DNA from: Haliotis rubra
Taxonomy: Eukaryota
Reading direction: 5' to 3'
DNA length: 64,000 bases
NCBI RefSeq assembly: GCF_003918875.1
Contig: NW_025767356.1
Span: 248,001-312,000 of the forward strand
Shown here: positions 18,164 through 62,680 of the stretch, piece after piece
Position numbering within the stretch: the first letter of the stretch is position 1
Layout: the number at the start of each line of letters is the position of its first letter
The notes under the pieces: generated by a model
Databases searched by the model: none
The model's input: the letters and a program-made list of their open reading frames with translations, nothing else
What the model was told of the DNA's origin: nothing
Position numbers and translations under genes: made by a program

Positions 18164-18575
18164 ATGTGTTATCTTTCTCAGTACTGGGAAAGTGTAATCC
18201 CAAATATAACATACATGTGACCACTTTCTAAAGGTATCGCGTATTCATAGCTTTCGGCCATTGGAGTCGTGCCTATTTACACTTGTCAGAGAGGTATGCA
18301 AACTTCGTGGTCTAGACTACCAGTGGTCTGCGATGGCTGAGTGGGTTAGATCACTGACTGTGTATGCTGGCGAAAAGGTGCCTGACTCTGAGAGTGTAGG
18401 TTCGAATCCCTGATGGGCGTAAACCTATAATAGTTCTAGAATCTGTACTTTACTAAGAAAGTGTAATTTCAAATGTAGCATAACTTGCCATGCTTACTTG
18501 AGTATTTATTGTTGAATTGGTTCGAATTAAGTGAAAACGCAAAAGTAGCACGTCCAGGCTGACATTATACGAACT

Positions 18576-37100: not shown

Positions 37101-38398
37101 TGACAAATGTGTAAAAGTAAGATCATCTAATCCAACTGTTTCCATCTGACTGAAGATAGCTGCATTGTTATAAGTGTAAAGGCTCCCTCGTATGGACAGT
37201 CGTTCCTGGCATTTATATATTATTTTGGGTTGTTGAGTAATTATTGTCTTTATTTTAGAATATATTTATGTGGATAAATGTATATCACGTTTCCTATACA
37301 GAAGTCTTAATTGATTAATGTGCCCCCAAATTGTACAGGAAACATAACTGACTGACTGACTGAGTTTGGTTTTACGCCGCTTTTAGCAATATTCCAGCAA
37401 CATCACGGCGGGGGACACCAGAAATGGGCTTCACACATTGTGCCCATGTGGGGATTCGAACCCGGGTCTTCGGCGTGACGAGCCAACGCTTTAACCATTA
37501 GGCTACCCCACCGCCCCAGGAAACATAACTGGTGAACCCGGAAAGGAAACGCTTATGAAAGGAATTCATGGTGTTTTCATTACGGCAAGTTAATTCAAAG
37601 GTTTCAATTTTAGGAGTTCTGGTACACTAACATTTTCAGAAAATGGTATCCTTAAAAACTCTTGTCATCTTTCAGGTTATATTTACCTGACCGTGCTGGG
37701 CGTCGGACTTGTCCTCATCCTGAGTATCATTGCCACGTATATCTCAGTCAGAAGGTTAGTAAGACATTTAAGAATGTATGTATTATTCACTAACTGCTTA
37801 CCACGAGGGACATGAGCGGTCTGGTCTTCTCTTTGGCTTATAAAACACCATTGGTCGGTTGGTATCTCAGATTCCTAAAGCGTTGATTCCTGGTGTCCCA
37901 GTATCCCCAAGATCATGGTTTTCCCAAGATTGTCAACACGACACGAAACGTTGAGTACTAAGTCAGCTGAATACTAGGAACTAACCTTCCTAGCTGTGCC
38001 CCAAATAATATGTATTATCACAATGAAATATTATGGAGCGGCTATTATCAAAGGTACTGGAATACTGTTTCAGACTTCGCGGCGTGGATGGTCGAGTGAC
38101 TGAGGGTCACTCAAATGCTGTTCAGAACCCCAATGGTACCCAATCTGACAATGATGACAACAGTGAGCTACAGACTCAAGATAAAGATGATGGTCACCCT
38201 GTCGAACAAATTGATCTTTGTTCTGTCGATACTGATAACAGTGCTTTCCTGGAAGAAATCTGCGATACGTCTGACGATCCTGCTGATCTATCTGACCACT
38301 CCGAGGGCCATACGGACCTTACTCCCAGTCCCCCTGAAGATGGCACGGTCTTCATGTCCGCCACCTACGACAACGTAACTTACATGTTTGGAAACTAG
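31150..38398 (+). CDS. G6: complete CTLD-like type I receptor with acidic tail ending in YDNV
   Basis: Exons 31150-31240 (signal MACPRQVVACCLTLAIIMANA), 33202-33381, 35239-35316, 36000-36071 (TNCTELHHYVCK), 36631-36657, TM 37676-37754 and tail 38074-38398. The frame is open throughout. Confidence 0.9.
31356..31566. repeat. 37-bp minisatellite, about 6 copies
   Basis: caccagacactgatctgcactcccaacacggaggatt. Confidence 0.9.
31761..32834. mobile_element. Non-autonomous Kolobok-like element in G6 intron 1
   Basis: 14-bp TIR aggtcacatgcaac / gttgcatgtgacct, TTAA on the right and ttaaga on the left. Confidence 0.65.
33715..35004 (+). mobile_element. Tc1-family DNA transposon (DD34E), near full length, in G6 intron 2
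   Basis: 27-bp TIRs (tagtatgaccagaaattattgagaatt / cagtacaaccagaaattattgagaatt) flanked by TA. The internal ORF has FSDES, QQDNDPKH and PDLNPIE with 34 residues between D and E. Confidence 0.95.
33909..34880 (+). pseudogene. Tc1 transposase with frameshifted N-terminus
   Basis: MDDLEKRKLILEYYNK from 33909 is broken by frameshifts before ORF 34023-34880, which carries GRPRK and the DDE domain. Confidence 0.8.
37351..37516 (-). mobile_element. SINE family A, young copy
   Basis: 15-bp TSD caggaaacataactg at 37336 and 37517. Confidence 0.9.
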
Positions 38399-42384: not shown

Positions 42385-42553
42385 GGGGCGGTGGGGTAGC
42401 CTAGTGGTTAAAGCGTTGGCTCGTCACGCCGAAGACCCGGGTTCGATTCCCCACATGGGCACAATGTGCTAAGCCCATTTCTGGTGTCCCCGCCGTGATA
42501 TTGCTGGAATATTGCTAAAAGCGGCGTAAAACTAAACTCAGTCAGTCAGTCAG
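42385..42553 (+). mobile_element. SINE family A, young copy
   Basis: TSD tcgattata, (CAGT)n tail. Confidence 0.9.
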
Positions 42554-43936: not shown

Positions 43937-46900
43937 ATGGCTTTGTCGTCCAGTCAACAATGGGTTGGCTCTATAATGACGGGTCTGATACTGGCGTGTG
44001 CGGAACACGGTAACTGTACTGTAAAACACTCCATGTCAGGTTGGTAAAGACATTTGTGTTACAATTTAATTAGAAGTGTAGAAAGTAATGCACTGTAGAG
44101 AGAGTAGAGTGTAATTTGATCAGATGTGTTGTCATCATTATCATTTTAACTTCCATCTCCATGGATGCTGAGCTTGATAACAGCTGCAACTTGTTGGTCA
44201 GACCCACACCTGATTATTTCCTGGCTACCTTACTTCAGTAATGTCAGATGTGACGGTATTGAGTCTTCTTAATAATCCAAAACACCACACTCCGGCACAG
44301 CGATGACTAACATAACATCACAGCCACAGGCTAATTTGCATATCACGTGACCGGACTTTTCTCTTGTTTGTTATCAAACGCGCATATTCATAATAATAAG
44401 AGACTGGGCTCACGAAAACTTTTTCGGCGCTCTCTTCATAATGTTTTACATTGTTACATAATATATAATCTTCCACAACTGCGACAGTTAGGTCTATGAC
44501 AGTACATATTTAGATATCAAACTGGTTGCATCGTTTGCTCTCCGTCGGCTTCGATGACTGCACGTGGAGCCGTACAACCTATGTAAACAAAGGATCTGTA
44601 CGCAAATCTAAATAGTGTTACATGTTTTGGGATGTTTTCTCAGCGAAACTTAACCATTCTATTAAAGATGTTTAGTTAGATGTGTAGACTCGTCAAAAAT
44701 AAAAGAGTAAAAGAAATCTGTACATTATATTGAATGGACATTGCAAGATGTGACGAATCGTCACATTTTTGTGGCCTGTGGCAGAGGTACTATGCTGGCT
44801 TGCCGCATGGAACTCTGGGTAGGTGAGTGCCAAAACACCTGTACATTCAATGTCACGTTTCAAATGTAAGTACAAGCAGGGCCTTATTTTACTTTTCAGA
44901 GAGTTCAGTGACCCCCTGCTACACGTTTCGCCACAACTCCAAACCGCAATCCAGGTATACAGTTCCTTGACCACTTGTAGACTATCACTGTGCCAAGGAA
45001 TCGGTAAAAGATCCACTTTATTGACATCAGTTCACCTCCATCAAAGTCATGGTTACACTATTCTTGTATCACGTCTATGCGGGTCATACATAACACTGTA
45101 CTATACACTGTACAATATCTGTTTTAAACTGATCTACTGAAGAATTGATGCAAAGCCAGTGTATTCCAGATTGACCTTATTGGCATGGATTTCTGATTAT
45201 GCAAATCTTTAAAGAGCATGTGTATTAATAGATTGTTACGTTATCAGAAGATATATTATTTAATAAAATTGACCCATCACGCATTGAAATATTTTACCTT
45301 CAGATAACTTGTCGTTTGAATCTTCCTGTGTCCCTCTGAACTGGAACTTGGCGGACACAGCCTGCAGAATGAAGGGCGCCGCTGTATTCACCCTCGTTGA
45401 TGTAGCAACATCACTTGGCGGCCATGCTTTGAAAAAAGCACAAGCGGATCATGGAACAATATGGATCGAAAATGATTTAAATGGTAATATCATGTCGCAG
45501 TTTCCACAAGACTTTGTCAATTGCGGCAAGATGCATGATAATTGAATGGAAACACACACATGCACACACATGCATACACATGCACACCTACATGCATGCA
45601 TACTATAAACGATAGATTTTTACAATAATTGTTTCAGTTTATTGCTATTGCGACTAAATGCCAAAGAAAGGTGACAAAACACGTCAATCGTGTAGATATT
45701 ATTTACGACATGGTTATCATTATTCGACAGGTACCTGCCTCGTAGCTGTCAGTGAGAGTCACACCTTCAACATGACAAGTTGTACAGAGCAGAACCATTA
45801 TCTCTGCACGTCGAACACAACAGGAAGCAGTGAGTACACACGAACCGATCTTATACCTCAGTTGTATATTTCAATACGTTAGAGAGTATAACCGAAGGAA
45901 TAGAATTACCCAACTAAAGTAATATCTCCCCTCTGGCAGTGAGAATTCATATTGACATTGGACATGCATGTACCAAAACTAGCACCGTTAGACGGAGCAT
46001 CTCTCCCGTCTGGTTTGATATTAAGTATCAAATAAACTGATGTGCAAAAGAAAGTACACAGGTTGTGTTTCTTCCAATAAGATAAAAATAACAAAACCTT
46101 TTGATGAAATGGAAAATGTATGTTGAAGCACACTGCAATACACGTGTTTTATCAGCAAAATGACATTGTAACAATAAACAGCGATGTGGTGATGACCACT
46201 GCAGACGGTTCCTACGATGCTGGAAGGTCAAGGCCATTCCACGCAGCGGTCGGTAGGCCCATACATGCCAGCAGGACGAAGTCGTCTTGTCACTGTGAAT
46301 CGGCTTACGCAATGACCCAATGATGTGGCTGCTGATGACGTCACCGTCAACATCCAGTTGCGTAGGTGAATAACCCGCAGAAAGCGATCCTCTTGGGGTG
46401 TTGTGACTCTGGAACGTCCACTTCTGGGTCGATCACACGTCTGGCCTGTCGTACTTAAACGGTTAAACAGCCGAATTATGGCTTGTCTTGTGCAACCCAA
46501 TGTCCTTGCAATATCGCTGTTGAAAGCACCCATTTGTGTCATTCCTTTGGCCCGTTCTCGTTGCGCCGACGTCAATCTTGGCATTTCCTCGTGAGATTTC
46601 TGTCAAGTGATTGTTCAGTCTTCACGACAAACAGGTTTTATACTCTCTGTCAGAAAAGTGCTGGTGCATGGGACAATAATCACAATTTTGCAAAAATTCG
46701 TAAAAAACACGTACAAATGTTTTTGGTTGCATTTTGGCAAATGAAACATGATGGTTGCGTTCTATACAATCAATGTTTTTCAATAATTTTATTAGTTAGA
46801 ACGCATATTTGGGTTTGCAACAACAATTACACCTGTGTACTTTCTTTTGCACGTCGGTTTACATGTATCAGTTTTAGCACATCAAAGTTGAGTGCACTGA

Positions 46901-48197
46901 AACTGTTACAATAACCAATGCAATGCAAACTGAAAACACGAATGTCTGTACATCGACAGATCCTGATTGGTATATACCGTGTCCAAACGACTCACCTGGC
47001 AAAGGTAATATTTTTCTGTTCATTCTGTAATGACATTTGCTATTGCATTGCGTGTCTTCACTGTTTTCTATATAAGATATGTACTATAAAATGTAAAATA
47101 ATGTCTCTTCGAATAGCATCAGTTCATCGCGTTGAGACACTGGTTAGGACTGGATAAGACTGACATCCATGATCTCTCATCGCTCAGAGATCCAGTGTAC
47201 AGTTTCTCATATGTTTACATAACAATCACCTCTGTGCTCAACTTCTTTTCCTACTTTGCGAATGTCTAAACATTTCTACCATAGCACATTAGGCCTGTTC
47301 CTTATTCTGTAGCTGTCATCACTGTTTTCAGTGATCCATTCATATAATATTCACAGCTTTTTTCCCCTGCACCGAAAACAATATGTTTCTAAGGATAATC
47401 GAGATTGTGTATCGTTTAGCATTTGGGTTCTATTTTTAAAACGAGCGAGGAAATGAACAGAGGGTTTATTTTGCATAACGGAAATATTTCAGTTTCATAC
47501 CGATGCACATATACGCTTGATGCGCTTTGTAAATTTTGCGAAAAACGGAATAGAATGTGTGAGGAAAAATATGGTATTCATTTTATACATACGCACATTA
47601 ATTATTGTCGATATATATTCAACTTCCTTGTGGGGAAGTGTTACTTCTCGGGAGGACATTGAAATCTAATGTTACGTCTTTTTTGCGAACTGTTACAAAT
47701 TAGTCACTGTGTAATTTTAGGTAAACACACTTTATCGGATATAACATGTCAAAATATAATACTCCATTTATTGCTTCTACAACACACAGGAACGATTGCG
47801 TCATGCCCACCGACATATGAAGGTGTCTTAATTATAAATATAATTATTGTTTCGTGAATTGAAATAATGCGAGAATGTAGCTCCATGTGTATTTTATGAT
47901 AGGCTTTCGTCAAGTGATTGATATCCTTGATGGGTATCATCAGCTGATATTTGCAGGCCTGCCTCAACATAACTGTTATGATTTTATATATCTATGTATA
48001 TTCTTTTTAAAAATGCATTATTTACAGATTGTCACACATGCCTCTGTATTATTTACCATGGTAGAGAACCCTTCTAAAATAATTATTACAATAACGTAAC
48101 AGTGAGTAAACCAATCATCTTTGTGTGACATGTTATATATTCAGGTATAACGCCTGCTTTTGTCGTCGCTGTGATGTCGGCCATCGTGTTATCATAA
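43937..48197 (+). CDS. G7: CTLD-like member whose TM exon ends in a stop (tailless, GPI-like or pseudogene)
   Basis: Signal exon 43937-44039 (alternative donor at 44009), 45304-45483, 45731-45829 (GTCLV...TSCTEQNHYLC), 46960-47004 (WYIPC), possible 47790-47822, then 48145-48197 GITPAFVVAVMSAIVLS*. Confidence 0.75.
46035..46859 (-). mobile_element. Internally deleted Tc1-like transposon in a G7 intron
   Basis: TIRs aac(t/c)ga(t/c)gtgcaaaagaaagtacacaggt with TA flanks. ORF 46228-46584 encodes only the HTH region (DRPRSGRSRVTT); no DDE domain. Confidence 0.9.
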
Positions 48198-50287
48198 CTC
48201 ACTGTTTCCAAAACCGGTACGATATATATTTTCGTGAACTGCTATACCTGGTGTATATCAAAACAATTATGTGAATGTACAATGACAGCAAGTAGTAGTA
48301 CTGGTTATAGTTCCAGTAGATACTAGCAATAAGCAGTTCAAGAGACACTGCCATACTAACTTCGAATATATATGTGTATTTATACCTTTATAATCCTAGC
48401 TTCTGGGTGGGCGAGCGAGCGGTTAAAGCTCATAGTATCGTACTGATGGGTTCGAGTCTCGAAATGGTTGTAATTGGTGAATGACTGCATGCGGCGTAAA
48501 ACCATACTCACTCTTTATCTTTCAGAACATAACGTGATGGAATAAGGGGAAGAGTAGAGTCATCATCTGTACATATGATATGTACACTGTACATCACACT
48601 AAAACCCTTGAGGAAATAGCGATTCACTAGTCTGGTGTATGACCAGGATAGTCTCGCATCATTCTGACAACTATAGGTTTACCCATTTCCCCAAAGTAGC
48701 ACATGTGACCGTGTTGTTGCCTCAGTGGAGAGGTGTTTCTCATATACGTGTAATTATCTTAAAGTGTTCGAATCCAAGAATACCAGTCACGAGACACAAA
48801 CGAGTACTGCGGGACTGAGAAATAATCCTAATCAGCACGACACGTTGTGTCGACTGGTGTGACATGTCTGTTTATTGAGGCTTGTTGATTGGGTTTGATT
48901 TAGTTCGTGTACATTGGCTAATAAACATTCATAAGTAACATGAAAACAGAGATTCGGTTGTTGTTGTTTTTGTTGTTGTTGTCAAAGCTGTCAACAAGGA
49001 ACCTACTGGTTTTATTTTGTTTAATTTGAGTACTTTGAAAGGGAAATAAAAATGAAAACTAATTTAGAAATATTTCCTCACTAGAATGCTCCCAGACCTG
49101 ACGCATATATGTTTTTCATTGCATTTTGCTGTACATATAAAACAAGTCAGTTCATAACATCCACATTTTCTTTACACCCGTCTCCCACCATGACCTCGGT
49201 TACAAAGCTATCCCAGAGATTGCATGGATTGGTTTCGCAGCACTGTTTTCCTGTTGGTTAAGATCAGCTTTAGCGTCAAACTGGCCTTTACTTGAATTGC
49301 CTTGTATTGACTTGATATGGAAAACAATATTAATGGTATTCATAATTATTTCTAGTGGCTGCAAGTAAGTCAGCATTGATAACTATATTACCCCGTTCAT
49401 AAAGAACTCGATTAACATCTGATTTATTTTGATCTCCACACAACGGCAATGCATGTGTGTATTAAACAATAATATTCGAAAACTGTTGCTCTCTTCACAT
49501 CTGGTGATATATTACCCCGTGCCATCATGCCCGTGCCATTAAAACGTGCCATCATGTTTTACAGTTTGTGGTATTGATAATTTACAAATTTTGCAATTGG
49601 CGCCTGCAACTCTGAAAATATGGGCTGAAGTCTTTTCAGTGACATGCTTATGTCTATTTGATTAATAAATATTAAACGAAATGAACATATAACATGATAC
49701 AATGAGGTGCCCTGTACGTATACAATGCTACTTGTATATATGTATCTTCCGGTCTCTTCACTCATTAATTTCTGAACTTGTACACAACAGACACAGTTTA
49801 AAATAACCAAGACATGCTATATATTTATGCAAGTCAACATATGTGTTATTATGTCACATGATTGTCTGATCTATCATTGGATTGTGTGGTTTATTTACAT
49901 GCCGACGTAGCACAACCATCAGTAGTTGTGTACAAAGTTAGGCAACAAGCAGGTATTTGGTGTTTTGTGCAGATCATGTTTTGCGAAAAGCTGATGCTGT
50001 CACTGATTTGCAGGGGGTTTCCAGTGATTATGATTTCCATTCCAATAACCTTATACTGATTATTCCCCTATGTTGCCGTTATTGTTGTTGTTGTTGTTGC
50101 TGTTGCCGTTGCCGTTGTATGCTGACTGCTCCATTACCACTACAATTAGTTACGTTGTGACAAAAACGAAATAGATTATATTCATAGATTTTTTCAACCC
50201 TTATTATATGAATACCAGGAAGAGATGTCGAAGTTACAACTCCCCCCTCGCTGTCACAAGGAAACACTGTACACAAACCTGTCGAAC

Positions 50288-53200
50288 ATGATGAACACAG
50301 TTGTAGCTGGTATAATCTGTGCTACTCTTGTAAGGCTTGAGTTGATACTGATGATATTGGGAGGTTCACATCCAGTGAGTACTCGCCGGGCAGGTACGTC
50401 GTGTACTCATTGCACGAATGGTGTGTTGTTTATGGTAGGATCTGCGTGTGCGTGCGTGTGTCCGTGTTGTGCGCTCCTGTCGTTATGTGAGCCACTTGCG
50501 ATTGCTATTTGTTAGAGGACTGCATAATGCTGACCATTTTGTTGTTTTAGAAAAAATATACTAGTACAGAAGAAATAGCTACATTTCAGTAAACTAAAAC
50601 ATCATTGCACCGCGTATTGGGTTCGATCGTGACATGATTGTGAACCATTTCCCCTCACCGCAATGTAATGTCTTGTCTAGAACCTAATGCTGACATTGGG
50701 CCGGTGGGGTAGCCTACTGGTTAAAGCGTTGGCTCGTCGCGCCGAAGACCCGGCTTCGAATTCCCACTTGGGTACATTGTGTGAAGCCCATTTCTGGTAT
50801 CCCCCGCCGTGATGTTGCTGGAATATTGCTAAAAGCGGCGTAAAACTAAACTCAGTCAGTCAGTAATGCTGACATTAATCACCCTGAACCCATATTGAAC
50901 GTTTACTGGCTAGTAGAGGCGGTTTAAGGACATTGACTGCAAAATGCAAATTTTCCCAAAGACTTTAACCACGTACTGTGCCACAACCTTTGGAACCGGC
51001 AAGATAATTATGATCATCTACACTGATGCCCATATTATCACATTTTGCTAGTACCGCATGGATCTGAAGACATGTCTTGATGGCTCCCACTATCCTCTAC
51101 GTGGTGTGTCATATTTAGGATTGCTGTATGATCCGAGGTCATTTTGAGGTCAGTGGTTTAGTATTGCCTCACCTGTGGTATCTTTAATATTAAATAGTAC
51201 GAATGATACACGTGCATTCATTTTCAACAAGGTTACATTTACTCTGGCAAAAGCTTCGTGTTGTGATGATATTAATGAGGAAGATGGGATTCGTTAATCA
51301 TGTAATCGTGTTGATCCCGTTAGACAAGATGGGGAGAAGGTGCCCGCTGAAACGTTATTTTGGTTTGGAGAACACTTGACTGGACTTCGCGTGTGTTTAT
51401 TGGATCATAAACACATCCTTTTATATGGCAGGTATCACACGTGTGACCGTGGAATGGCATTGCCTGACTTTATTTGATTACTAGCATGTAACTCAATTAG
51501 TAGTAAAGCTTTAAAAATATTTGCTGCGGAAAAGAAAGTGATATATCTTGATAATAAGCTTGTTTAATGTGTGATGTAGTCAATGACTGACTAAACATTG
51601 CCCTGAAGTATTTATAATTAACACCTGTTTGATGTTTCGATTCATTCTCAACATTGCTGACATAGGACAAAAATGATGCTGAAATATATAGTATAGATGT
51701 GGAACATTATGTGCATGTTATGCTATGCTAATCATTTCGTATTATTGATATCTGTACTACATAGAAGCGGCAGAACCGTCATAAACATATGCGAAGTCTA
51801 GTCAGTTGTTCACCTGAAATAATTCGGGAACGTATGGTATAAGTCAAAATAGGGAATTGCATCGGACATCATTTTTGTCACTATTGCATCAAATTTTGAA
51901 ATTTCCTCCACATGTCTATCATAAAACTTCTTGAAGGCTTTTGTTGAGGCCTTGATCAAACAACTTCTGAGCAAGAGTGGCATGAGGCCCTATGAAATCC
52001 TGATAAAATGAGCACCTCCTTGATTGCCTCTCAAAATTTGTGAAATGTAAACATCAAAGGCTGGAGCTGTTGAAATATTGCTCGACATGAAAGGGAACTT
52101 GACTATTGGAATCATCCCTGTTGTCGCACAGCCTTGTGTAGATTTTTTGTCACTCTGAATCTTTATGCGTAGATCTAAACATGAAACAGTTGAGGCAGTC
52201 TCACTTGTCTCCTTAATTTCAAGTTTAGGTCGGTAAATCAGTGAAAGGCAATTAGCTGTTTGAGGGTTATTGAACGATATTAAATCATCGATGTACCGGA
52301 AGCTTATTAAGTTAAACTTCTTGGCCAACTTACCATGTTTTGATTCATATGCATACAGAACCAGATCCGCAAGGAGGGGGGCACAATTGGTTCCCATGGA
52401 GATGCCTGCGTCTTGGCGAAATGTTTTACCCCCACATTTCACAAAGATGTTATCAATGAGAAAGTTCAGCATTTCACATATTGTTTTCTCGGTAAACTTG
52501 AAATGACATTTGCTTTCATTTTTTTACACATTGTCCTGAACCTCTGAAGATAGATATGTAGGTATATCTTTGTTCACCACGTTTGTTTACAAAGCCCCAT
52601 GAATCAAGGAATGGAGTTTTTCCTTGATTGTTATGTTTGTGTACTTGTTTTTTGTATGCTAACATCTGTTTGAAATCTGTGTTTCCATGATGTCTTTACA
52701 GTATTGCCCAGTGTCCATGGGTCCTGCTTCCCCGCTAGTGCAGCGATGGCGAAGAAAAACTGTGAGGAGAGAAGCGGGGTCTTATTCAGCATTGATGACC
52801 TGAAGATGGCCCATGCTCTACGTATCATGGAATTAGCGATACAAGACTTGGGAGACATATGGATGTTTACGAATAGTGCAAGCACTTTAGAGAGAAGTAC
52901 GCTTATCAAATGTTCATGATTTTAATGTTTAAATAAAATCGTTAGTATATTTGATAAAGGGTAAATATATGTTTGAGTTTTACAAAGACCAGTGAACGTT
53001 TGACATTATACGTTCGTCATAGATTGTAAATGACCGTTATTAACGGTTCATTGTTACGTTTATTACAGATCTGGACGTGGCCGGAACGTGCCTTACTGAC
53101 GTCAACAACAACCGTAAGTAGATCACATTAATGTCACATACAGAAGGACAACGCATAATCATTTGGTCAGGTTCATATCATCAATATCTTAACATAAACC

Positions 53201-56200
53201 ACTAATATTTACATAAGAGCAAACACGTGGCGATAAGGCAATGATACATGTAGCTGCCACAGTCATGATGGTTTACTGGCTGTATACGGCAATGTGTACA
53301 TTCACTCAGATAGGCAATCTCCATCAGTTGTTTACCTACATGTATGCATTATGCATCTATTCGTTCTTGTTGGTGGAAAGAGACACTTGCAAGGAGATAT
53401 ATCTGAATGAATCGGTGGAAATCAGTTATGTAACCAGGTTGCCGTATACATGTCAGCATGTCCTGCTCTATCGGTATGACCCTCAAGCCACAACATTGTT
53501 ACAGCAAGGGGTGTGTAAAGAGTAAATGGATGGCAGCTCACATAACGGCGATGATGTGCGTATGCAGCATCACGACAGACTAATCTTTCTATGTTCAACG
53601 TTCCTTCACACTGTTCCAGGTTCCTGTCCTAAGGGCGTCAACTGTGGAGACTTACATGGATGCTGCAAGTCTACGGTGACAGGTTTGTATATATAGTAAT
53701 GTCATAAAATATATGCACTGCTGATATTTGGGGATGGATATTCCTCCACTTTTCTTGAAACACACATATGTATATAAACTGTGTAGACGGGTGGACTAGG
53801 CGAGTGTTCAGGGCTTTCGTTCGCCAAGCTGTTGAATCGGGTTCGATTGCAACAGATGATTCAACTTGCAAATCACGCTTCTGTTAATGAACACTATCTG
53901 GGGGATGGGAATCTGAAAATGTTATACATGTAAAATTCATTAATACGCTGTTTTGCACATGTATGTGTTTTCATAGAAGCTGTCATTTCATGAAATTGTA
54001 TCAGTATTGCATTCTATAACTCGATATACTAAATGTAATTGATTAATCCACAAACTATTTGTTTTCAAAGATTCGACAGGTGTTAATACCTTCACAAGAA
54101 TCAGCTGTGAGGAACTGCGTCATTATGTCTGTAAAATAAACAGCAGTAAGTATACATTATTTGAAATGATAAATATATTTGTGTTAGTGCTACATATTGA
54201 TTGATCAGCTACAATGGGTGTGTGGCTGGGGGTGTCCAGGTCGCCACAACGTCACCGTTAACTGTGCGCGTTTGCTTCTCACAGGCACGAAACAAACTCA
54301 AGTTGCTGGTTCGAATCACAGTTTGCCCCCCCTTCCTTATTTGACAAAAATGTACCTAACATTGTGTAATCTCCCTAAGGGACATCACAGACCCCCGAAT
54401 TGCCCCTTTTTTCATCATTCCTACCTCTATAAGGTCGTTGGGGTAGCATAGTGGTTAAAGCGTTCACTCGTCACATCGAAGGCCCGGGTTTGATTCCGCA
54501 CATGAGTACAATGTGTGAATCCCATTTCTGGTGTCCCCCGCCGTGATATTGCTGAAATATTGCTAAAAGCGGCGTAATGCTAAACTCACTCACTCCTACC
54601 TCTATATCCAACTGTCATCTACCTCTATATCCAACTGTCATACTGTCATCCTTTTAGCCGATTCACTAATTTCATATCCGTTTTGTTAATTTATTTCACT
54701 CACCTGTAATTGTTTGTAAATATTCACGACCCAGGATACGTTGACATGCAATCAGATACGTCCCCCGGCCTGACCGCATAATCTGTGATACCGACTCTAC
54801 CGGGCCTAGTCCAGTATTCCTACTCTACTTTGGTATGCTGAACATAATACATTATGATTATATTGGGCTCCGCATTCTCATCGAATTTGTGATTTGGAAC
54901 ATTTAACGCATTCCTCTGCATTTTCAGCTGGTCAAGATTTTCGCGGGAACAGTAAGTATGGTCGGAAAGCACACATTCGCGCCGCGAACTCATAAACAGA
55001 TCAGAAATTGTTTGTCATGTTAAGGTGGTATCCATACTCAAGAGGAAATTATAATAATACTGAGAAGTGAATCCTTTGTAAATACAGAAGTAAATCATAT
55101 CAACAGTTACATTTCCCTCTGCTACTACTATGTCGTTGACGTCTACGTTAACGTTTTACAGTACACCGTTCAACGGCAAAAGATCCTGTGTATACTGGAG
55201 TTGTGACCAACAGAAATATCCGGAATCCCCTTTTGTATTTCACCAGAATAAGTATCTGGACTCAGTTTATGAATTTTTACATTTACTGATCATACACCTG
55301 AGGAAATCACTTGTTATTATAATGTGTACTGAATTATGTTGTTTGTAATCAACATGTATTGCTCGTTGTAGGAACCAAAGAAATGTACATTCCATGCATG
55401 AACGACACATCTTCATCAAGTGGGTAAAGCTTCAGACTACATTTGGTTCTAATCTAAACTTGTATCCGACTAGTATGTCAACGTATTATGACATCGGTGT
55501 ACGGAGTGATGATTGTTTTTGTGACCACACGTTGGAAGGGTGTTAACGTTTATATATTGCTATTCCATAATATAACCCTTTTCCACTGCCACAGGGATGG
55601 ATTGTACTAGACCCACTGTATCTTGAGCGCGTGTCCGGGCTTATTCGTTGTTTGGTAACAAATGCTCTGTGTCGACTTTGAAGATTCAACACATATTATC
55701 ACCATTTATAACCACTGTATATATTATCTGCTCTTAAGTCGCACAATTCTTCAACAAAAAATTCCATATACTAGTGACTTGTTCAACAATTCTGATCTCG
55801 TCTTTGTTCCAGCTATTGCTATCATCATTGGCGTAGTCGTGACGGTGACGGTGGTGGCGGGCTTCATTACATGCTGCTGCTGTCTAATCAAGTGGTACGA
55901 ATGTGATCCTATCGTTTCTAACATACATTCTTCCATTTTGCCGATTGACCGTTTTAACGGGTTTGGTAGATAATGGAAATATATGGACAAGATATAAGAT
56001 TGTAATTATACTACATGTTAATGACGTTTCACACAAACCTTCCTTTATGCCGCTGCAGCGTCACCAAGCCGATCAAGTATGCAGTGCGAGTTCAGAGTGC
56101 GCTGTACCACAAGAACAACCCTGGACCGGGAGTAGCCGGGGGTCCTCAGACCAAACCACAAGACATGTTAGCTACACACGTGGTCAACCTTAACAACATG

Positions 56201-56203
56201 TGA
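50288..56203 (+). CDS. G8: CTLD-like type I receptor, Cys-rich juxtamembrane region, short tail
   Basis: Exons 50288-50393 (signal), 52702-52896, 53069-53113, 53620-53682, 54071-54145 (ISCEELRHYVCK), 54928-54951, 55372-55419 (MYIPC), TM 55813-55894 (...FITCCCCLIK) and tail 56059-56203. Confidence 0.85.
50698..50863 (+). mobile_element. SINE family A, young copy
   Basis: 13-bp TSD taatgctgacatt. Confidence 0.9.
51850..52630 (-). mobile_element. Penelope-like retroelement reverse transcriptase fragment
   Basis: ORF 51990-52472 has GISMGTNCAPLLADL, FRYIDD and FPFMSSNI..APAFDVYISQ; degenerate. Boundaries approximate. Confidence 0.8.
54432..54593 (+). mobile_element. SINE family A
   Basis: 13-bp TSD tcctacctctata. 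Confidence 0.85.
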
Positions 56204-58803
56204 AGAAATAACTGTTTGATACACACAACCTGGGACTGAGTGCAACTACAAACAGCAGTTGGAGTCGGGCTCGGACGTCAATTACAGACATCATAATTGC
56301 CGATTGGACGTCACTTTACAATGTGTCGATGGAGCAATGAGCACGCCTTAAGACGAGACGAGTTTTGATGTGACTGTGGCATGTTGCTGCTGTTATTCAT
56401 GAATTCCTAAGTTGTGTGTGTGTGGTTATAAGGTACCCACGCGACAGTCCCTAGCTGGGTGTACCAAGCATGGATATAGTGCATAGCATCAGCAATTATT
56501 TGTTAAAAAAATGCTCATTGTTTTCATAACTACTGATTTGATGTACCATGACCTGGCCGAGGACCAACTCTCGTATTCGTAGGGCTTACAGTTGAGAGAT
56601 TTCCTTGGGATTTAGTTAACTATGTAACTACTTGGGGCCTTTATTGTGGATAATACATGTTCTTGTCATGGGATAATTATGTTAGTTTAATACAAATCAT
56701 CCGATGAAGGTTTGTTTAACAAACACAGTTGTCAGCCCTGGCTGACGTCAAGAGTTGCATACTCCGAGGTCCGCGCTTGACCCTGAGATTGTGGTCAGAA
56801 TTACTACAGATACGTCATTACTTCTGACTAGTTACTGTCAGTGTTGCTAATGCGTTTACATTCGCCTGGTAGACGTTAACACTTTGTCCTTAAAGCCTAA
56901 GTGCATTGTATTTCAAAAAGCCCTTTGAGCCACAATGCGCAGTGCGCACTAATCGGATTCTCTGAATGCGAGGAGTTAATGACGAATACAATACCCAAGG
57001 TCTGTTTGGTCTGGCGTCAATGAATTGGCCCATGAGCTCATATCATTGATCACTGCTAAAAGACATTGACTTCGTTCCTTATTATCCTTTATGTGTTGTA
57101 ATTCAAGTAATACTTTCGATAACAAACGACACGAAGTGAGTTCATTGGGTAGCAGGAAATTATTTTTGTCCTTGTTTCGCTTTTGCAGACGAAATACATG
57201 TTTCAGGTGTTTTTTCCCATTATTGAAGAGGCCGTGTTTCAGATAAATGCATGTTTGTGGCAAATGTGTCAAAACTGTAGGAGAGTGTGTCCTCGTATAC
57301 GTACTTTCAGTTGTACACTGTTCATGATGTGGCTTAAATACTGCCGATGTGACTTTAAATATTAACTCACTCAGTCACGCATTTTTTTACTGGGCAAAAT
57401 TAGTCAAAAAGAGTTATACACATTGGCAAGAATCACAAAACATATATTAAATTAGAAAGAAATGTGGAAGAGCTACCGCCTCGCCTCATTCCCAGCTATG
57501 AGGTTTGAGTAAGGTTTGGGTGGTGACAGTGTGGAAACAGATTTGATGGCAGGAGGTAAACAGGAGTCTCTTTATACGAGGGCTGTTTTAGATCATGTGG
57601 ATATTCAGATGTGACAAACATTTAAAGGGTGATAACTCGTGATAGTCTACTGTCTATATCTTGGTTCTCCTGATGTCTTGTTTGGTGATTTCCTGGTACA
57701 CTGTACACTGGTAAATGTCGGCTTATTGCGCTCCCGCATGTACACTTGTTAAAAACTATTCTTGATCCTGCTGAACCAGTCTGGGGCGAGACCTATGAAG
57801 GGAACAACTGATTGTGCCAAACATTGACAATGGTTTGACGACATGTTCGATCGTGGATATTATATCAAATAAATTCCCTGAAAATGTATCACAATTGCGT
57901 GTCAAATTAGACAGACACATACAGCACAGATGTCTATTGATGTATGTTGTGTCGCACTACATGCACAGTGTTGACTGTATGGTACATATACACTCTGTCA
58001 AACTCGGACTCTGTCTTTCTCGGATTGCTGTATTAACAGGACTGAACTTACGGTCCTGGCGTAATCCTTCTTTGTTGCCATAATGAAAAAGCTCTGTAGC
58101 TCGGACTCTCATTATTTCGGATTTCGGACCAAAGTGTCGGCCCGAAAAGGTAGTTACACGTAAAACTGTACACGATATTGTGTATTCTCTGCCCTCTTTT
58201 GTAAACGTTTTTGTGTGTAAAAGCCTCCATGTAATGAACATGCACACATCGATAATCACATTGATTTCAATTAAGTACTAATAAAGTATCACGCTTTCAC
58301 TTAAGCTCATATTCAGCTTTGTTTAACATCTGGTATACCTCTGAAGGTATGAAGAGTGTGTGTGTGTGATATCCATTGATATCAAGGAAGCCTCATGTTT
58401 GTAAACAGTATTGAGCAGGCTGTGTTTGAGCATTGGTCCGTGTAGATTTCCCGCTCTGTGAGACCACCCCAGCGTAGATTGTTGATGAAGTAAGGGGTGA
58501 TGCACGTCGTTACAGCGACGTGCAGGACCTCAGAGTACAGGTTGTAAGTTGTAGCTGTGAATACTTCTGTTTTAACTCGTTCGAATCGTGATCATCCCGA
58601 GAGGCAGGGAATACGAAAACTCTCTTTTCACACATGCACTCTCTCACACATATTCGAACCGCACACTCTCTCACACACAAACGTACTCACATCCACACTC
58701 TCACACGCACGCATTCACGAACAACACTATCTACTTTATAGTCTCTCTTATGTTCACGCACACACGTACACATATGTTCTCACACATAAACCCGTACGAT
58801 CAA

Positions 58804-58866
58804 TCTCTCTCTCTCTGTCTCTCTCGTTCTCGTTCTCTCTCGCTCTCCCTCCTTCCCTCCCTCACG

Positions 58867-58897
<31 letters not shown>

Positions 58898-58913
58898 TAT
58901 TTATAATGTCAAT

Positions 58914-58950
<37 letters not shown>
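58804..58950. repeat. (CT)n/(CA)n microsatellites just upstream of the G9 start
   Basis: Read directly from the sequence. Confidence 0.9.
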
Positions 58951-58953
<3 letters not shown>

Positions 58954-59109
58954 TTACATGCACAATCACATGCTGAGACAGTTCTCACAAATCTATAAAC
59001 CCTTGACACTGGTGTATCATTACTCAATTGTGTCAGGCGTGTTACAACCCGGAAGCTGGGTCAGCACTCTGACAGTCTCTAGCTCCCCTTTGGTCACGAC
59101 ACAATAGCG

Positions 59110-62100
59110 ATGGCCCGTGTACGCCCATCTCTCGCTGTTATAATACTGCTGATACTGACGTTGGATAATTCTAGAGTAACCCACAGTCAACATTCAGGTG
59201 AGTGACTGTTTTACTACAGATATAGACCATTCTTCAGCTCTAATCTCCTTCATGTCTTTTATCCACAAGATCTATACTGCACCTGACAACCGAAAGTCAA
59301 TGAGAAGCATTATCTTTGCATGATGATATGTGTGTTAAGAGGAGGTAATATAATATGATCTTTACATGCATTTTGTTTTCATGTCCGAGATATGAAGTAT
59401 CTAGGTTTATATAATATGTAAGGCAGTTGACCTCAGCAAGACCAACCAACATGAAAGTATACCAGGTTTTCACGCATCTCTCGTAACTATAGATGTGATG
59501 ACGCTATAGAACCAATATATTGTCACCCACTAAATACTATACAGAGTTCTCATTATCTCATGTCAACCCTTAGAGATGTTATCTCAATTACTTACTTCTT
59601 TTTGTAGTAAATAAGACATTCCATGGATCCTGTTTCCCTGCAAACGCAACTGTGGCTGAGATAAACTGCAAGAAGGAAGGTGGAGATTTATTCAGCCTTG
59701 TGGATTTGAAGTTGGCCTATGGTCTTGTCGTGTTGGAGTCGGCAATACCTGATGTGGGGGCGATATGGATGAATGGCAACACAGGCAGTAATGTTTTTAC
59801 GTATCATTATCTCATACTTGTGAACGGAAGCAAGCTTGTGTGACCGATTACGTCTAAATTGTTTGATTCTAAAATAATTCCTCTGTTATTTGTAGCTTAC
59901 ACATGTTAAATATGAATATTACACAAGCATATAGAGTGCGCTTATTACTTTAGGGACGACAGAAGATGACCCGTTGTCATTTCATTATCATCAACAAGAT
60001 AGGGGCAGCATTGTAAATACAAGTAAATTGACGTTTCCGTGACCTGATAGACAGATCACCAGCAGTGGTTCGATCTATGGCCGCATACCAAAGTACACAC
60101 ACGCACGTACACGCGTACATGCATGCACCTTCACATACACACACCTACACACATGCACGAACACACATGCATGCATATCGTTTTCTTAGTGCATTTGTCT
60201 TCAATCCTCATTTCACCTCACCATATGAACAGACATGAAATATACAGGTGAAAACATCAACCATACGACGTTTATTGTATACGAAATACATGCATCTCAC
60301 GCTTCGCACGCCCTTCTGCTGTTTTTCTGTTCTTCAGTAGTTAGTGAGTCTGACGTCTATCAGGAACTTTACAATACCTGCCGATATTACATCGACATCT
60401 TCGTGTTCTGTATTCGCAGCTACTTATCCACTCAATGTCAAGCATAGTCATAATGTCCCATATAAGTGCACCGCCTCATTTATATGTTCGACAAAAGATA
60501 TATCACTTGCAACAATTCAAATTATTATGTGATGTTATACAGCAATCCAGTACACTGTTGGCATCATAAAATGCCCAATACAATGATCTCAATACATTGT
60601 GCAAAATGATGTTGCAGATCCCTGTCAAAGTACCACAGATGGAGCCAGTATCAAGACAAACATTTGTTGTGTGGCTGTTAGTGAGTACACGCTTGTGGCA
60701 CATTACCACTGTATACATGTACCTGCTGTTCTTTGTGTATCATACAGCACAGATCCTCAATAACATCTGACCTCAAGGTCATCTCTACTGATGACATGTG
60801 TAGCATGATATCTGGCGTTTTTGGAGGATGTGCATTGTATTGTGCCAAGAGGTAGATACCGTTGATACAACATTTATCAGTGGTGAGAGAGTGAGCAGTG
60901 AAGTGGTTGGTTTATGCTGAACTTAACAGTGGAAATGTACTACATGCTTCTCGGTAGACTTATGTATGTAACTGACTGCCCCACATCAGCTGTTACTCTT
61001 CAAGCAACCCGATATGTCGCTTATTGCATGTGTGACATCAGCATAGTCTTGTTTGATTCAAACAGATTTTATCTTGCTTTTGTCAGATTCAAATGGCACT
61101 AACATATTCCAGACCGCCAACTGTGGAGACCAGTATCACTATGTTTGCAACTTAAACACTAGTAAGTGGAACAGCGTTCATTTGTAATTTGCAACAGCAT
61201 GATTTAACTTCATTTTGGTGTACAATATCATAACGTTATGTAAACATTGTTTAAATTTCACTTGTAACAGGAAATTGTATTCATTATATGATAAAACTAA
61301 ATGGAACGTAACTATATTAATTGGTCATTACGTTCATCTTGATATGACATGTGCACATCACTTCAAACATCCAAACTAGGTGGTCACTATGTCAGATCTA
61401 GAATCATATGAACAACATTAGTGTCCAGTTGAAATCTAGATGCTCACAAGATCTACATAGAAGCAACGTCAGATTATCCGAAATATAGTTGAATTTGTTG
61501 TGTGTATCTTCATCTTGTACATTGTTACCCACAGCTTCCACGGAAGAGCGAAATGGTAAGTATATATCATGCAAGAAGACTAAAGAATCAAGCATGCGAT
61601 AACTCGCCTTACGGTTCGAGATGTGGAGCAGTATGAAACACAGATGTACAGCCATGTTTATTTTCTTTCTGTGCCACAGGAACACATCTCTACATACCTT
61701 GCTTGAACAACATACCTTCAACAGGTAAGCTGATGAAATGTTTCCTATCCCGGTATGTAATGTCACAGTCACTAAAACATGTCACATCCATGTCACAGGA
61801 AAGGCCGGAAATGGCATGTCAAATAAATATGTCAGAAATCTGCACTATTCGTCAACATCGTCCCTGCCTTAATCTATGAATTCTCTGTACATGTGTAATA
61901 CTTCCCTTTAATGAGAATTGGTAGGTTACATTTTGTCACTTTTGCAGACATTGCTGGCATCATTGCGGGGACGTGCCTGACTATAACGCTTGTCGTGGCT
62001 TTGATAACTGTCTGGTGCTACTGCAGTCGGTAAGGGAATGGTCTTATTTGTGATGATTTTCTTAAACTGATATATACTTGACAAAAATAGTTACGGATAT

Positions 62101-62680
62101 ATGTAAATTTTGAAATTATGAATTATGATCTATTTATTCATTTACACCCTGATAAAATATCAATCATAAAAATACTAATATACCTAACTTATTTTGTCCA
62201 GTATATATGCACCATGCTGCTGAATTACAGGTAACGTTTTAGACCGGTGGGTTGTACATGGTACAAGAGTTCATAAAGAAACATTCTATGTGATTCAGGA
62301 TCAGGAAACCCAAGCGTTATGCAGTGCGGGTTGAGAGTGCGATATACCACCGTCAACATCCTGATACAGACAAGGGAGGCAACAGAGCTGCTGATGTAAC
62401 GGCTATAGATGACATCAACACAGACTCTGCTGCTATCAACCAGGAACAACGTAAAGGAGCAAATGGCGGCGATTATGACACATTGTGCAGGATGTGGTCA
62501 ACAGAAGACAATGTAGTTAACCAGAGGTCCGACGTGGCGTCGGTGTACAGCCATTTGTCAGGAATTGACAATCTGGGTGGTTGGACCATCGAAAACCATT
62601 ACGACAGCACCGCTGTACCCATGTATGACAGGAGACCTGTTGATAATTTATATGACAGAACACATGTCCCGGATATATAG
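59110..62680 (+). CDS. G9: CTLD-like type I receptor with ITIM-like long tail
   Basis: Exons 59110-59197 (signal MARVRPSLAVIILLILTL), 59608-59787, 60618-60680, 61087-61161 (ANCGDQYHYVCN), 61535-61555, 61680-61724 (LYIPC), TM 61948-62029 and tail 62299-62680 (DYDTL, SVYSHL, HYDST, LYDRT). One small exon between 59787 and 60618 may be missed. Confidence 0.9.

What the first reader, a model, noticed from the sequence alone, without database searches (positions are those of the whole stretch)
50288..62680. G8 and G9 form a classic paired-receptor couple
They are adjacent close paralogues. Both have HGSCFPA, 63-, 75- and 82-nt exons, and a KP.(K/R)YAVRV.SA(L/I)YH juxtamembrane segment. G9 continues into a long tail with the ITIM consensus SVYSHL plus YDTL, YDST and YDRT. 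G8 stops after about 47 residues and has a Cys run after the TM (possible palmitoylation). No charged TM residue is seen in G8, so DAP12-type coupling is not supported.
Basis: partly seen in the sequence, partly recalled or inferred. Interest (0 to 1): 0.7.

Follow-up and report, generated by a model that had tools for sequence, protein, structure and literature searches.

The report
Abalone lectin-like receptor gene pair
Two neighbouring abalone genes encode related lectin-like surface receptors, one with a long tyrosine-rich inner tail and one with a short tail, but they are old, well-diverged relatives and not a textbook inhibitory/activating "paired receptor" couple.

Summary
The window is Haliotis rubra (0 mismatches to contig QXJH01000649.1 over 14.9 kb). 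G9 is LOC124257074 and G8 is LOC124257073; both are annotated "uncharacterized".

**Confirmed**
- The 63-, 75- and 82-nt exons in both genes.
- The shared juxtamembrane box, the Cys run, and a G8 membrane helix with no charged residue.

**Corrections**
- G8 does not start at 50288, which lies in an intron. It starts at 43937 and has two lectin-like domains.
- The shared domain is only 41-49% identical between G8 and G9, both within and between species. Silent sites are saturated and there is no sign of gene conversion.
- The strict ITIM is present in 2 of 8 homologous long tails and arises in 28% of shuffles.

**What is conserved**
- Seven tyrosines in the long tail: two in the box, YDxLC, VY(S/G)HL and a C-terminal triple-YD module.
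- G8's short tail, which ends at the same place in all seven annotated orthologues and isoforms of four species (dN/dS 0.27-0.40).

Both ectodomains fold as compact C-type-lectin-like domains without sugar-binding motifs. The family was found only in Haliotis.

The scan had already noted this G9 tail and a better paired-receptor case just downstream.

Verdict: a real, conserved long-tail/short-tail neighbour pair; "classic paired receptor" is only partly supported.

The parts
43937..44039 (+). G8 (LOC124257073) leader exon with signal peptide; not in the H. rubra annotation
   Evidence: 65% identical to the H. asinina P0013 N-terminus. 103 nt, as in three orthologues. GT donor in phase 1.
44900..44954 (+). 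G8 Ser/Thr-rich cassette exon, 55 nt here versus 54 nt in H. rufescens and H. cracherodii (+1 in a C5 run)
   Evidence: Alignment. Including it breaks the frame; skipping it gives an intact 367-aa ORF.
45304..47004 (+). G8 first lectin-like domain (D1): exons 45304-45483, 45731-45829 and stalk 46960-47004
   Evidence: P0022 maps here. In the tree D1 groups with the 'C' clade domains.
47005..52701 (+).
   Evidence: Exon mapping. The homologous intron is 5.9-10 kb in three other species. ORF list.
52702..54145 (+). G8 second lectin-like domain (D2): exons 52702-52896 (HGSCFPA), 53069-53113, 53620-53682 (63 nt), 54071-54145 (75 nt)
   Evidence: Pfam Lectin_C E 7.9e-4, 20.6 bits, below the 22.6 cut-off. 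AF2 model pLDDT 70 with the top 50 Foldseek matches all C-type lectin domains.
54928..55419 (+). G8 stalk exons 54928-54951 and 55372-55419 (conserved YIPC cysteine)
   Evidence: The stalk Cys is invariant in 17 domains.
55813..55894 (+). G8 membrane-helix exon, 82 nt, uncharged helix followed by CCCC
   Evidence: The Cys cluster is kept in orthologues.
56059..56203 (+). G8 last exon, 145 nt: juxtamembrane box KPIKYAVRVQSALYH, conserved C-terminus ...DMLATHVVNLNNM, stop TGA
   Evidence: dN/dS 0.27-0.40 between species.
59110..59197 (+). G9 (LOC124257074) leader exon with signal peptide
   Evidence: Exact mapping of P0018. Splice joint 59197 to 59608 seen in a run X1 contig.
59608..61161 (+). 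G9 lectin-like domain: exons 59608-59787 (HGSCFPA), 60618-60680 (63 nt), 61087-61161 (75 nt)
   Evidence: AF2 pLDDT 71.5 and pTM 0.70; the top 50 Foldseek matches are all C-type lectin domains. X1 joints.
61535..61724 (+). G9 stalk exons 61535-61555 (21 nt, cassette) and 61680-61724 (45 nt, YIPC)
   Evidence: The X1 contig running on from 61161 matches the joined exons 30 of 30.
61948..62029 (+). G9 membrane-helix exon, 82 nt
62299..62680 (+). G9 tail exon: box KPKRYAVRVESAIYH, GDYDTLC, SVYSHL (ITIM consensus), then HYDST / MYDRRPVD / LYDRTH module, stop TAG

Best explanation
G8 and G9 are two neighbouring, anciently separated members of an abalone-restricted family. Its members are type I membrane proteins: signal peptide, compact C-type-lectin-like ectodomain, short Cys-containing stalk, one membrane helix and a cytoplasmic tail.

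- **G9** has one lectin-like domain and a tail of about 130 residues with seven conserved tyrosines.
- **G8** has two lectin-like domains. The second is the sister lineage of G9's domain; the first is of another clade. G8 keeps only the membrane-proximal tail box with two tyrosines, followed by its own conserved 30-residue end.

**Shown:** the gene models, the fold, the orthology, the conservation of both tails, G9 splicing, and the lack of ectodomain homogenisation.

**Inferred:**
- Ligand-driven clustering leads to phosphorylation of the tail tyrosines, which recruit SH2-type effectors.
- G9 can dock such partners through its YxxL motifs and its triple-YD end. G8 cannot, so G8 signals differently or modulates, for example as a weakly signalling co-receptor or decoy, possibly palmitoylated at its Cys cluster.
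- Whether G9 is inhibitory or activating is open.

The pair is a stable long-tail/short-tail division of labour. It is not a rapidly co-evolving classic paired receptor.
For: **Identity and gene models**
- The window equals H. rubra QXJH01000649.1 with 0 mismatches in 14,891 nt.
- P0018/P0007/P0017 map exactly onto G9.
- P0022 ends at 56203, as L003 shows.
- An all-canonical 367-aa G8 ORF starts at 43937.

**G9 transcription**
- Run X1 contigs carry the 59197/59608 joint, a joint into the 63-nt exon, and the 61161 to 61535 to 61680 junction.

**Fold**
- A profile of 17 domains hits only C-type lectin domains in the PDB. The best E is 4.8e-9; single-domain hits are REG4 at 0.0036 and NKR-P1B at 0.0084.
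- The two AF2 models give 50 of 50 top Foldseek matches to C-type lectin domains.
- There are no EPN/QPD/WND motifs.

**Age and independence**
- The tree puts G8-D2 (three species) and G9 (four species) in one 100/100 clade, with orthologues grouped by gene.
- G8-D2 versus G9 identity is 41-49% within and between species, and dS is above 1 or saturated.
- The G8-then-G9 order is kept in four species.

**Tails**
- Six of eight Tyr columns are invariant in eight long tails, against 25 of 122 other columns (Fisher p = 0.002).
- dN/dS is 0.22-0.33 for the G9 tail and 0.27-0.40 for the G8 tail in the deeper species pairs.
- The box is invariant at P, Y, A, V, R and H in 12 proteins.
- All seven G8 models end in the same place.

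**Plausibility in molluscs**
- An oyster ITIM-bearing receptor is reported to bind a SHIP phosphatase (PMC11841013).
Against: - No phosphorylation, binding or expression-site data exist for either protein.
- G8 had no coverage in the only RNA-like run, X1.
- In H. rubra, G8's annotation lacks a signal peptide, and one 5' exon is out of frame if included.
- The YxxL motifs could serve as endocytic sorting signals and not as SH2 docking sites.
- Tyrosine conservation is measured on related sequences, so the p-value is generous.
- AF2 confidence is moderate (pLDDT about 70), and the stalk and loop parts are poorly modelled.
Confidence: 0.6

Rival explanations
1. G9 is an ITIM-bearing inhibitory receptor and G8 is its short-tailed activating or counter-balancing partner for the same ligand class, so the two form a classic paired-receptor couple.
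For: - They are adjacent paralogues with one architecture and one box.
- SVYSHL fits (I/V/L/S)xYxx(I/V/L).
- The tyrosine is kept in 8 of 8 long tails and Leu at +3 in 7 of 8.
- G8's short tail is stable in four species.
- ITIM-phosphatase signalling is reported in an oyster.
Against: - The ectodomains are 41-49% identical, G8 has an extra domain, and there is no conversion.
- The -2 position reads S, S, P, P, A, T, A, A across the eight tails, so only 2 of 8 meet the strict consensus. Such a motif arises in 28% of shuffles.
- The H. cracherodii orthologue has lost the +3 Leu.
- G8's helix has no charged residue and G8 has no activating motif.
- The most conserved tail parts are YDxLC and the triple-YD end, not the ITIM.
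Confidence: 0.1
2. Both proteins are adhesion or endocytic (cargo-uptake) receptors, like many type I C-type-lectin-domain proteins. On this reading the tail tyrosines act mainly as YxxPhi-type sorting or internalisation signals and not as phosphotyrosine docking sites.
For: - The topology is type I with a CTLD ectodomain.
- YDTL and YSHL fit YxxPhi.
- The juxtamembrane box shared by long- and short-tailed members could be a trafficking element.
Against: - Seven tyrosines are conserved. Three of them are YD(R/T) motifs with no hydrophobic residue at +3 in G9, which is more than sorting needs.
- Per the scan's earlier notes, the cluster also holds ectodomain-less tyrosine-tail proteins (not tested here). 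That fits signalling better.
Confidence: 0.2
3. G8 is decaying in H. rubra. It would be a pseudogene or non-secreted remnant, so the "pair" has no joint function in this species.
For: - The annotated P0022 starts at an internal Met without a signal peptide.
- The 55-nt exon carries a +1 shift relative to the 54-nt orthologous exons.
- The annotation needs a non-canonical acceptor at 54068.
- The RNA-like run X1 has no G8 coverage.
Against: - An intact 367-aa ORF with only GT-AG introns exists if the cassette exon is skipped. Comparable Ser/Thr inserts are optional in the related genes P0002/P0005.
- dN/dS between H. rubra and the other species is 0.16-0.51 in all three regions.
- The +1 lies in a C5 homopolymer and may be an assembly error.
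- X1 is a small run of 47 million letters.
Confidence: 0.1

Closest known systems
Vertebrate paired immune receptors (KIR2DL/2DS, Ly49, NKR-P1, PIR, SIRP, CD200R/CD200RL)
   Same: - Clustered paralogous genes.
- One member has a long tyrosine-motif tail and one a short tail.
- One motif fits the ITIM consensus in this species.
   Different: - The ectodomains are only 41-49% identical, against typically above 80-90% in paired receptors.
- The domain number differs (2 versus 1).
- There is no charged helix residue for an ITAM adaptor.
- There is no conversion or homogenisation.
- The pair is stable across the genus.
- The ITIM is not strictly conserved.
NK-cell and myeloid C-type-lectin-like receptors (NKR-P1B, CD94/NKG2A, CLEC12A, Dectin-1/CLEC-2 hemITAM)
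   Same: - The ectodomain has the CTLD fold and no Ca2+/sugar motifs. NKR-P1B and CD94/NKG2A are among the structural matches.
- The tail carries tyrosine motifs. (G/D)(D/E)YDxL loosely recalls the acidic hemITAM DEDGYxxL.
   Different: - Those receptors are type II, with an N-terminal tail; these are type I.
- Here the long-loop region is much reduced, and in G9 it lies on a small separate exon.
- No sequence kinship beyond the CTLD superfamily was found.
Type I CTLD membrane proteins (layilin, CD93/CLEC14A/thrombomodulin group, mannose-receptor family)
   Same: - Type I orientation with one or more CTLDs.
- The best profile hits are mannose-receptor-family CTLDs.
   Different: - There are no EGF, FNII or ricin modules.
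- The ectodomain is much smaller.
- The tail is unrelated and was found only in Haliotis.
Mollusc ITIM-bearing receptors (oyster CgNCAM1-SHIP2 axis, PMC11841013)
   Same: A mollusc type I receptor whose tail tyrosine motifs are proposed to recruit an SH2 phosphatase.
   Different: - The oyster protein has an Ig/FN3 ectodomain, not a CTLD.
- Its binding was tested experimentally; nothing has been tested for G8 or G9.
Downstream neighbour LOC124257045 and its partner in the same H. rubra cluster (earlier scan finding s1-344830)
   Same: - The same family and the same G9-type long tail: P0008 is 44% identical to the G9 tail and reads TVYSHL.
- The same juxtamembrane box.
   Different: - That pair is reported by the scan to share a near-identical ectodomain. 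This was not re-tested here.
- G8 and G9 do not.

Membership tests
Classic paired (inhibitory/activating) immune receptors | Neighbouring paralogous genes in one cluster | tested here: met
   G8's stop at 56203 and G9's start at 59110 lie on the same strand. The order is kept in H. asinina, H. cracherodii and H. rufescens.
Classic paired (inhibitory/activating) immune receptors | Highly similar ectodomains, often kept alike by gene conversion | tested here: not met
   Identity is 41-49% within and between species, dS is saturated, orthologues group by gene, and G8 has an extra domain.
Classic paired (inhibitory/activating) immune receptors | Inhibitory member with a conserved ITIM in a long tail | tested here: inconclusive
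   The long tail is present. The strict consensus holds in 2 of 8 homologous tails, the Tyr in 8 of 8 and +3 Leu in 7 of 8. 27.7% of shuffles contain an ITIM.
Classic paired (inhibitory/activating) immune receptors | Activating member with a short tail and a charged membrane-helix residue that binds an ITAM adaptor | tested here: not met
   The short tail is present. The helix IAIIIGVVVTVTVVAGFIT has no charged residue, and the same holds in the orthologues.
Classic paired (inhibitory/activating) immune receptors | Opposite signalling outputs on a shared ligand | not testable with these tools
   This needs ligand and signalling assays.
[quoted passage not shown] | CTLD fold (two helices, two sheets) | tested here: met
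   The AF2 models of G9 (pLDDT 71.5) and G8-D2 (70.1) give top 50 Foldseek matches that are all CTLDs, with TM 0.4-0.6.
[quoted passage not shown] | Sequence-profile match to Lectin_C | tested here: inconclusive
   Pfam Lectin_C scores 20.6 bits against a 22.6 cut-off for G8-D2, over positions 4-106 of 107. G9 has no hit. The family profile hits only CTLD chains in the PDB; the best E is 4.8e-9 on multi-domain chains and 0.0036 on a single domain.
[quoted passage not shown] | Ca2+/carbohydrate motifs (EPN or QPD, plus WND) of true C-type lectins | tested here: not met
   None is present in G8 or G9. The long-loop region is shortened. They are therefore lectin-like domains, not demonstrable lectins.
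ITIM | (I/V/L/S)xYxx(I/V/L) in a cytoplasmic tail that binds SHP or SHIP when phosphorylated | tested here: inconclusive
   The pattern is met by SVYSHL at 62540-62557. Binding is not testable here.
ITAM / hemITAM | YxxL/I-x6-12-YxxL/I, or DEDGYxxL | tested here: not met
   In G9, YDTL and YSHL are 20 residues apart, and 14-16 in the 'C' clade. GGDYDTL only loosely resembles a hemITAM.

The most novel reading that the evidence does not exclude
The G9-type tail would be a mollusc-specific immunoreceptor signalling module that arose independently of vertebrate ITIM/ITAM tails. It comprises the juxtamembrane YAVRV..A.YH box, two YxxL motifs and a nearly invariant C-terminal triple-YD block.

On this reading, G8 is its conserved "box-only" partner that tunes or opposes G9. 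Together with the ectodomain-less tyrosine-tail proteins of the same cluster, the locus would be an abalone counterpart of an NK-gene-complex-like regulatory receptor system.
Probability: 0.15. Interest if true: 0.75.

Novelty: new variant of a known kind. Interest (0 to 1): 0.4.

Why it matters
Regulatory immune-type receptors with tyrosine-based tails are well understood in vertebrates and barely known in molluscs. This locus offers several things that can be tested.

- It is a lineage-restricted, fast-evolving family: orthologues are only 54-79% identical between distant abalone species.
- The tails are under purifying selection.
- It contains a long-tail/short-tail neighbour pair that has been kept across the genus.

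That gives concrete motifs to test: YDxLC, VYSHL, the triple-YD end and the shared box. It also gives corrected gene models for abalone haemocyte biology, which matters for a farmed animal troubled by disease.

The result is also a caution. One ITIM-like hexamer and a short-tailed neighbour do not make a paired receptor.

Tried and rejected
1. **Word search with the G9 tail exon** found nothing, because full-length relatives fall outside its length window. The full HMMER search then found the family.
2. **Pfam on single exons** gave nothing, and phmmer of P0013 against the PDB gave nothing. Only the family profile and the fold searches showed the CTLD.
3. **The 63-nt exon** was first sought between the 75-nt exon and the membrane-helix exon, and then upstream, without result. 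It lies between the two lectin exons.
4. **Leader candidates** at 50288, 50070 and 52599 were rejected. Orthologues and the annotation splice from 47004 to 52702.
5. **A remnant of a long tail** after G8's stop or in the 2.9-kb spacer was not found. The only extension, in H. cracherodii, is weak and gappy.
6. **RNA evidence for G8's 3' end** could not be obtained. The one read-laying run covered 55300-61299. Run X1 had no G8 coverage, and X2/X3 look like genomic DNA of a related abalone: one X2 contig runs unspliced across G8's last intron, and the rest pile up on spacer repeats.
7. **The scan's note that G2 carries a G9-type tail** was not reproduced. tblastn of the G9, G8 and related tails against the whole window hit only G8 and G9 at E <= 0.05.
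8. **P0003**, a 2798-aa protein with E 9.9e-5 over 13 stretches, was set aside as a low-complexity match.
10. **Literature searches** found no paper on these genes or on abalone membrane CTLD receptors with tyrosine tails.

The N runs at 16737-16871 and 25426-25609 were left alone.

Full report
**Where we are.** The window has about 40% G+C and no Rfam matches. The scan's notes say the genome is an abalone. I confirmed the source. A 23.6-kb locus fetched from Haliotis rubra assembly GCA_003918875.1, contig QXJH01000649.1, overlaps the window over 14,891 nt with no mismatch.

**The observation.**
- Hand reading of the DNA gave the 75-nt and 82-nt exons in both genes, with identical intron phases. 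The tail exons start with the shared box KP(I/K)(K/R)YAVRV(Q/E)SA(L/I)YH.
- The 63-nt exon lies between the two lectin exons in both genes, at 53620-53682 and 60618-60680.
- G8's helix is uncharged and is followed by CCCC..C. G8 stops at 56203, and G9 runs to 62680.
- At the DNA level the genes share only 154 nt at 69% and 33 nt at 88%, so "close paralogues" is too strong.

**Finding the real genes.**
- A word search with the G9 tail found nothing in its length range. The family scans left the exons unexplained, so I used the full HMMER search with the 126-residue G9 tail exon.
- It returned two clusters, both from Haliotis.
- A profile search then listed 13 proteins, all "uncharacterized", from H. 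rubra, H. asinina, H. rufescens and H. cracherodii.
- P0018, P0007 and P0017 (LOC124257074, isoforms X1-X3) map onto the window exactly as eight coding exons. This is G9.
- The gene upstream in the H. rubra record ends at window position 56203 and encodes 312 aa. It is P0022, LOC124257073. This is G8.

- P0022 and its orthologues carry a first lectin-like domain upstream of the HGSCFPA domain. The orthologues are P0013 (H. asinina, 386 aa), P0023 (H. rufescens, 367 aa) and P0027 (H. cracherodii, 367 aa).
- In the window that domain is at 45304-45483, 45731-45829 and 46960-47004, and it splices across a 5.7-kb intron to 52702.
- The H. rubra annotation starts at an internal Met (45369) and has no signal peptide. 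The orthologous leader is present at 43937-44039.
- The Ser/Thr-rich exon that follows is 55 nt here, against 54 nt in two other species. The extra base lies in a C5 run.
- Skipping that exon yields an intact 367-aa ORF with GT-AG introns throughout.
- The annotation also uses a non-canonical acceptor at 54068. The canonical site at 54071 gives the 75-nt exon found in all orthologues.

**What the ectodomains are.**
- Pfam Lectin_C matches the second G8 domain over its whole length, but just below the cut-off (20.6 versus 22.6 bits). G9 has no hit.
- A profile of 17 family domains hits almost only C-type lectin domains in the PDB; the sole exception among 31 is a weak match (E 1.2) to an F-BAR domain protein. 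The alignments show a gap of about 30 residues where the long loop would be.
- AlphaFold2 models of the G9 ectodomain (pLDDT 71.5, pTM 0.70) and of G8-D2 (pLDDT 70.1) both give 50 of 50 top Foldseek matches to C-type lectin domains. These include NKR-P1B and CD94/NKG2A.
- No EPN, QPD or WND motif is present.
- Six cysteines are invariant, one of them in the stalk motif Y(I/V)PC.
- So these are compact C-type-lectin-like domains in type I orientation. This agrees with an earlier scan note on the neighbouring gene.

**Are the two a "pair"?**
- In the maximum-likelihood tree, G8-D2 (three species) and G9 (four species) share a 100/100 clade. G8-D2 forms its own 100/100 group on a long stem, and orthologues group by gene. 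G8-D1 falls with the other ("C") clade.
- G8-D2 versus G9 identity is 41-49% whether the two are taken from one species or from two. Silent-site distances are above 1 or not computable.
- So there is no homogenisation, and the duplication predates the split of these four species.
- The G8-then-G9 order is kept in all four, with spacers of 2.9 kb (H. rubra), 9.6-9.7 kb (H. cracherodii and H. asinina) and about 11 kb (H. rufescens).

**The tails.** Eight long tails were aligned: four G9 orthologues and four "C"-clade proteins.
- The tyrosines of KYAVR, YDxLC, VY(S/G)H, ENxYD, PxYDR and (I/L)Y(D/A)R are invariant. The tyrosine of SAxYH is kept in 7 of 8.
- Six of eight Tyr columns are invariant, against 25 of 122 other columns (p = 0.002). 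This is a generous test, because the sequences are related.
- The ITIM hexamer fits the strict consensus only in H. rubra (SVYSHL) and H. asinina (SAYSHL) G9. The others read PVYGHS, PVYGHL, AVYSHL (three times) and TVYSHL.
- 27.7% of shuffles of the G9 tail contain a strict ITIM.
- The two YxxL motifs are 14-20 residues apart, which is too far for a canonical ITAM.
- The best-conserved part is the C-terminal block ENxYD(S/T)TxxPxYDR(R/K)P(V/I)DxxYDRxH.
- G8's tail keeps the box and then has its own conserved end..(D)MLA.H(V/I)(V/I)NLN... Its last exon is 145 nt in all four species. All seven annotated proteins, including four H. rufescens isoforms that differ only in the stalk, end there.
- No G9-like distal tail sequence follows G8's stop or lies in the spacer.
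- In the deeper species pairs, dN/dS is 0.22-0.33 for the G9 tail and 0.27-0.40 for the G8 tail. Both tails are therefore constrained.
- Between the close pair H. cracherodii and H. rufescens, the G9 tail shows dN 0.054 against dS 0.006. This could be noise or recent adaptive or relaxed change.

**Transcription.**
- Only three runs held parts of the region. I laid them on 55300-61299.
- Run X1 has spliced contigs: the 59197/59608 joint and a joint into the 63-nt exon.
- A 2,391-nt X1 contig leaves the 75-nt exon at 61161 and continues with 30 of 30 letters of exons 61535-61555 plus 61680 onward.
- G9 is therefore transcribed and spliced as annotated, in a related abalone sample with about 3% differences.
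- X1 has no coverage of G8. X2 and X3 look like genomic DNA: one X2 contig runs unspliced across G8's last intron, and the rest pile up on spacer repeats. G8's short end thus rests on the annotations of four species and on conservation, not on reads seen here.

**Mechanism.**
- The best reading is a family of tyrosine-signalling surface receptors in which G9 has a full docking tail and G8 only the proximal box.
- The sign of G9's signal is open. A YxxL with a variable -2 residue can serve inhibitory, activating or sorting roles.
- An oyster receptor with ITIMs has been reported to bind a SHIP phosphatase (PMC11841013), so such wiring is plausible in molluscs.
- G8's Cys cluster at the inner membrane face is kept in orthologues: CCCCCC..C in H. 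asinina, and GGCC..C in H. rufescens and H. cracherodii. That fits palmitoylation, but G9 also has two cysteines there.

**Comparison and novelty.**
- The pair fails three of the defining features of classic paired receptors that could be tested: similar ectodomains, conversion, and a charged helix residue. It meets one (clustered paralogues), and the ITIM feature is inconclusive.
- It is a member of the CTLD superfamily by fold, and it is not a demonstrable lectin.
- No paper on these genes was found. The big search found the tail only in Haliotis.
- The scan had already noted this G9 tail (s1-344997), the compact type I CTLD (s1-344998) and a downstream pair with shared ectodomain (s1-344830).
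- I rate this a new variant of a known kind, of moderate interest.

**Limits.**
- The N runs were left untouched.
- Read laying was given 6,000 letters.

Noticed in passing
window 44900-44954: G8's Ser/Thr-rich 5' exon is 55 nt here but 54 nt in H. rufescens and H. cracherodii (45 nt in H. asinina). The extra base lies in a C5 run and breaks the frame if the exon is included. This probably explains why the H. rubra annotation starts at an internal Met without a signal peptide.
   Followed up: partly
window 54068-54071: The annotated H. rubra G8 protein has an extra Glu that needs a non-canonical CA acceptor at 54068. The canonical AG site at 54071 gives the 75-nt exon seen in all three orthologues.
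   Followed up: partly
window 51990-52472 (minus strand): A 160-aa ORF with a reverse-transcriptase-like ...FRYIDDL... motif lies inside G8's 5.7-kb intron. It is probably a retroelement fragment.
   Followed up: no
window 50680-50860, 54430-54615, 37356-37552, 42386-42545, 18003-18168, 4764-4956, 5159-5347, 1312-1482: A repeat of about 130-180 nt occurs in both orientations in introns and spacers of the cluster, at 55-90% translated identity. It may be a SINE-like element.
   Followed up: no
window 57344-57442 and 57991-58165; 58557-59000: Two spacer segments between G8 and G9 pile up at very high depth in runs X2 and X3, so they are high-copy repeats. A (CA)n/(TC)n-type microsatellite lies at about 58.6-59.0 kb.
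   Followed up: no
L001 and L006 (G9 orthologues of H. cracherodii and H. rufescens), tail exons: Between these two close species the G9 tail differs at 12% of residues with almost no silent change (dN 0.054, dS 0.006). H. cracherodii has lost the Leu at +3 of the ITIM-like motif.
   Followed up: partly
proteins P0014, P0015, P0016 (genes outside this window): Some family members or isoforms carry a different short tail with (Y)YSHL, ten residues, then NNYA(T/A)L. In P0015 and P0016 that is ITAM-like spacing of two YxxL motifs (P0014 has HYFSHL).
   Followed up: no
window 5079-6820: An earlier scan note says G2 has a G9-type tail. tblastn with G9, G8 and related tails found no match there at E <= 0.05.
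   Followed up: partly
window 13077-13322, 24670-24891, 33144-33464 (with second exons near 14195, 25624, 35957): Three more lectin-like first exons of the same family lie upstream on the + strand, so the window holds a tandem array of at least five such genes.
   Followed up: no
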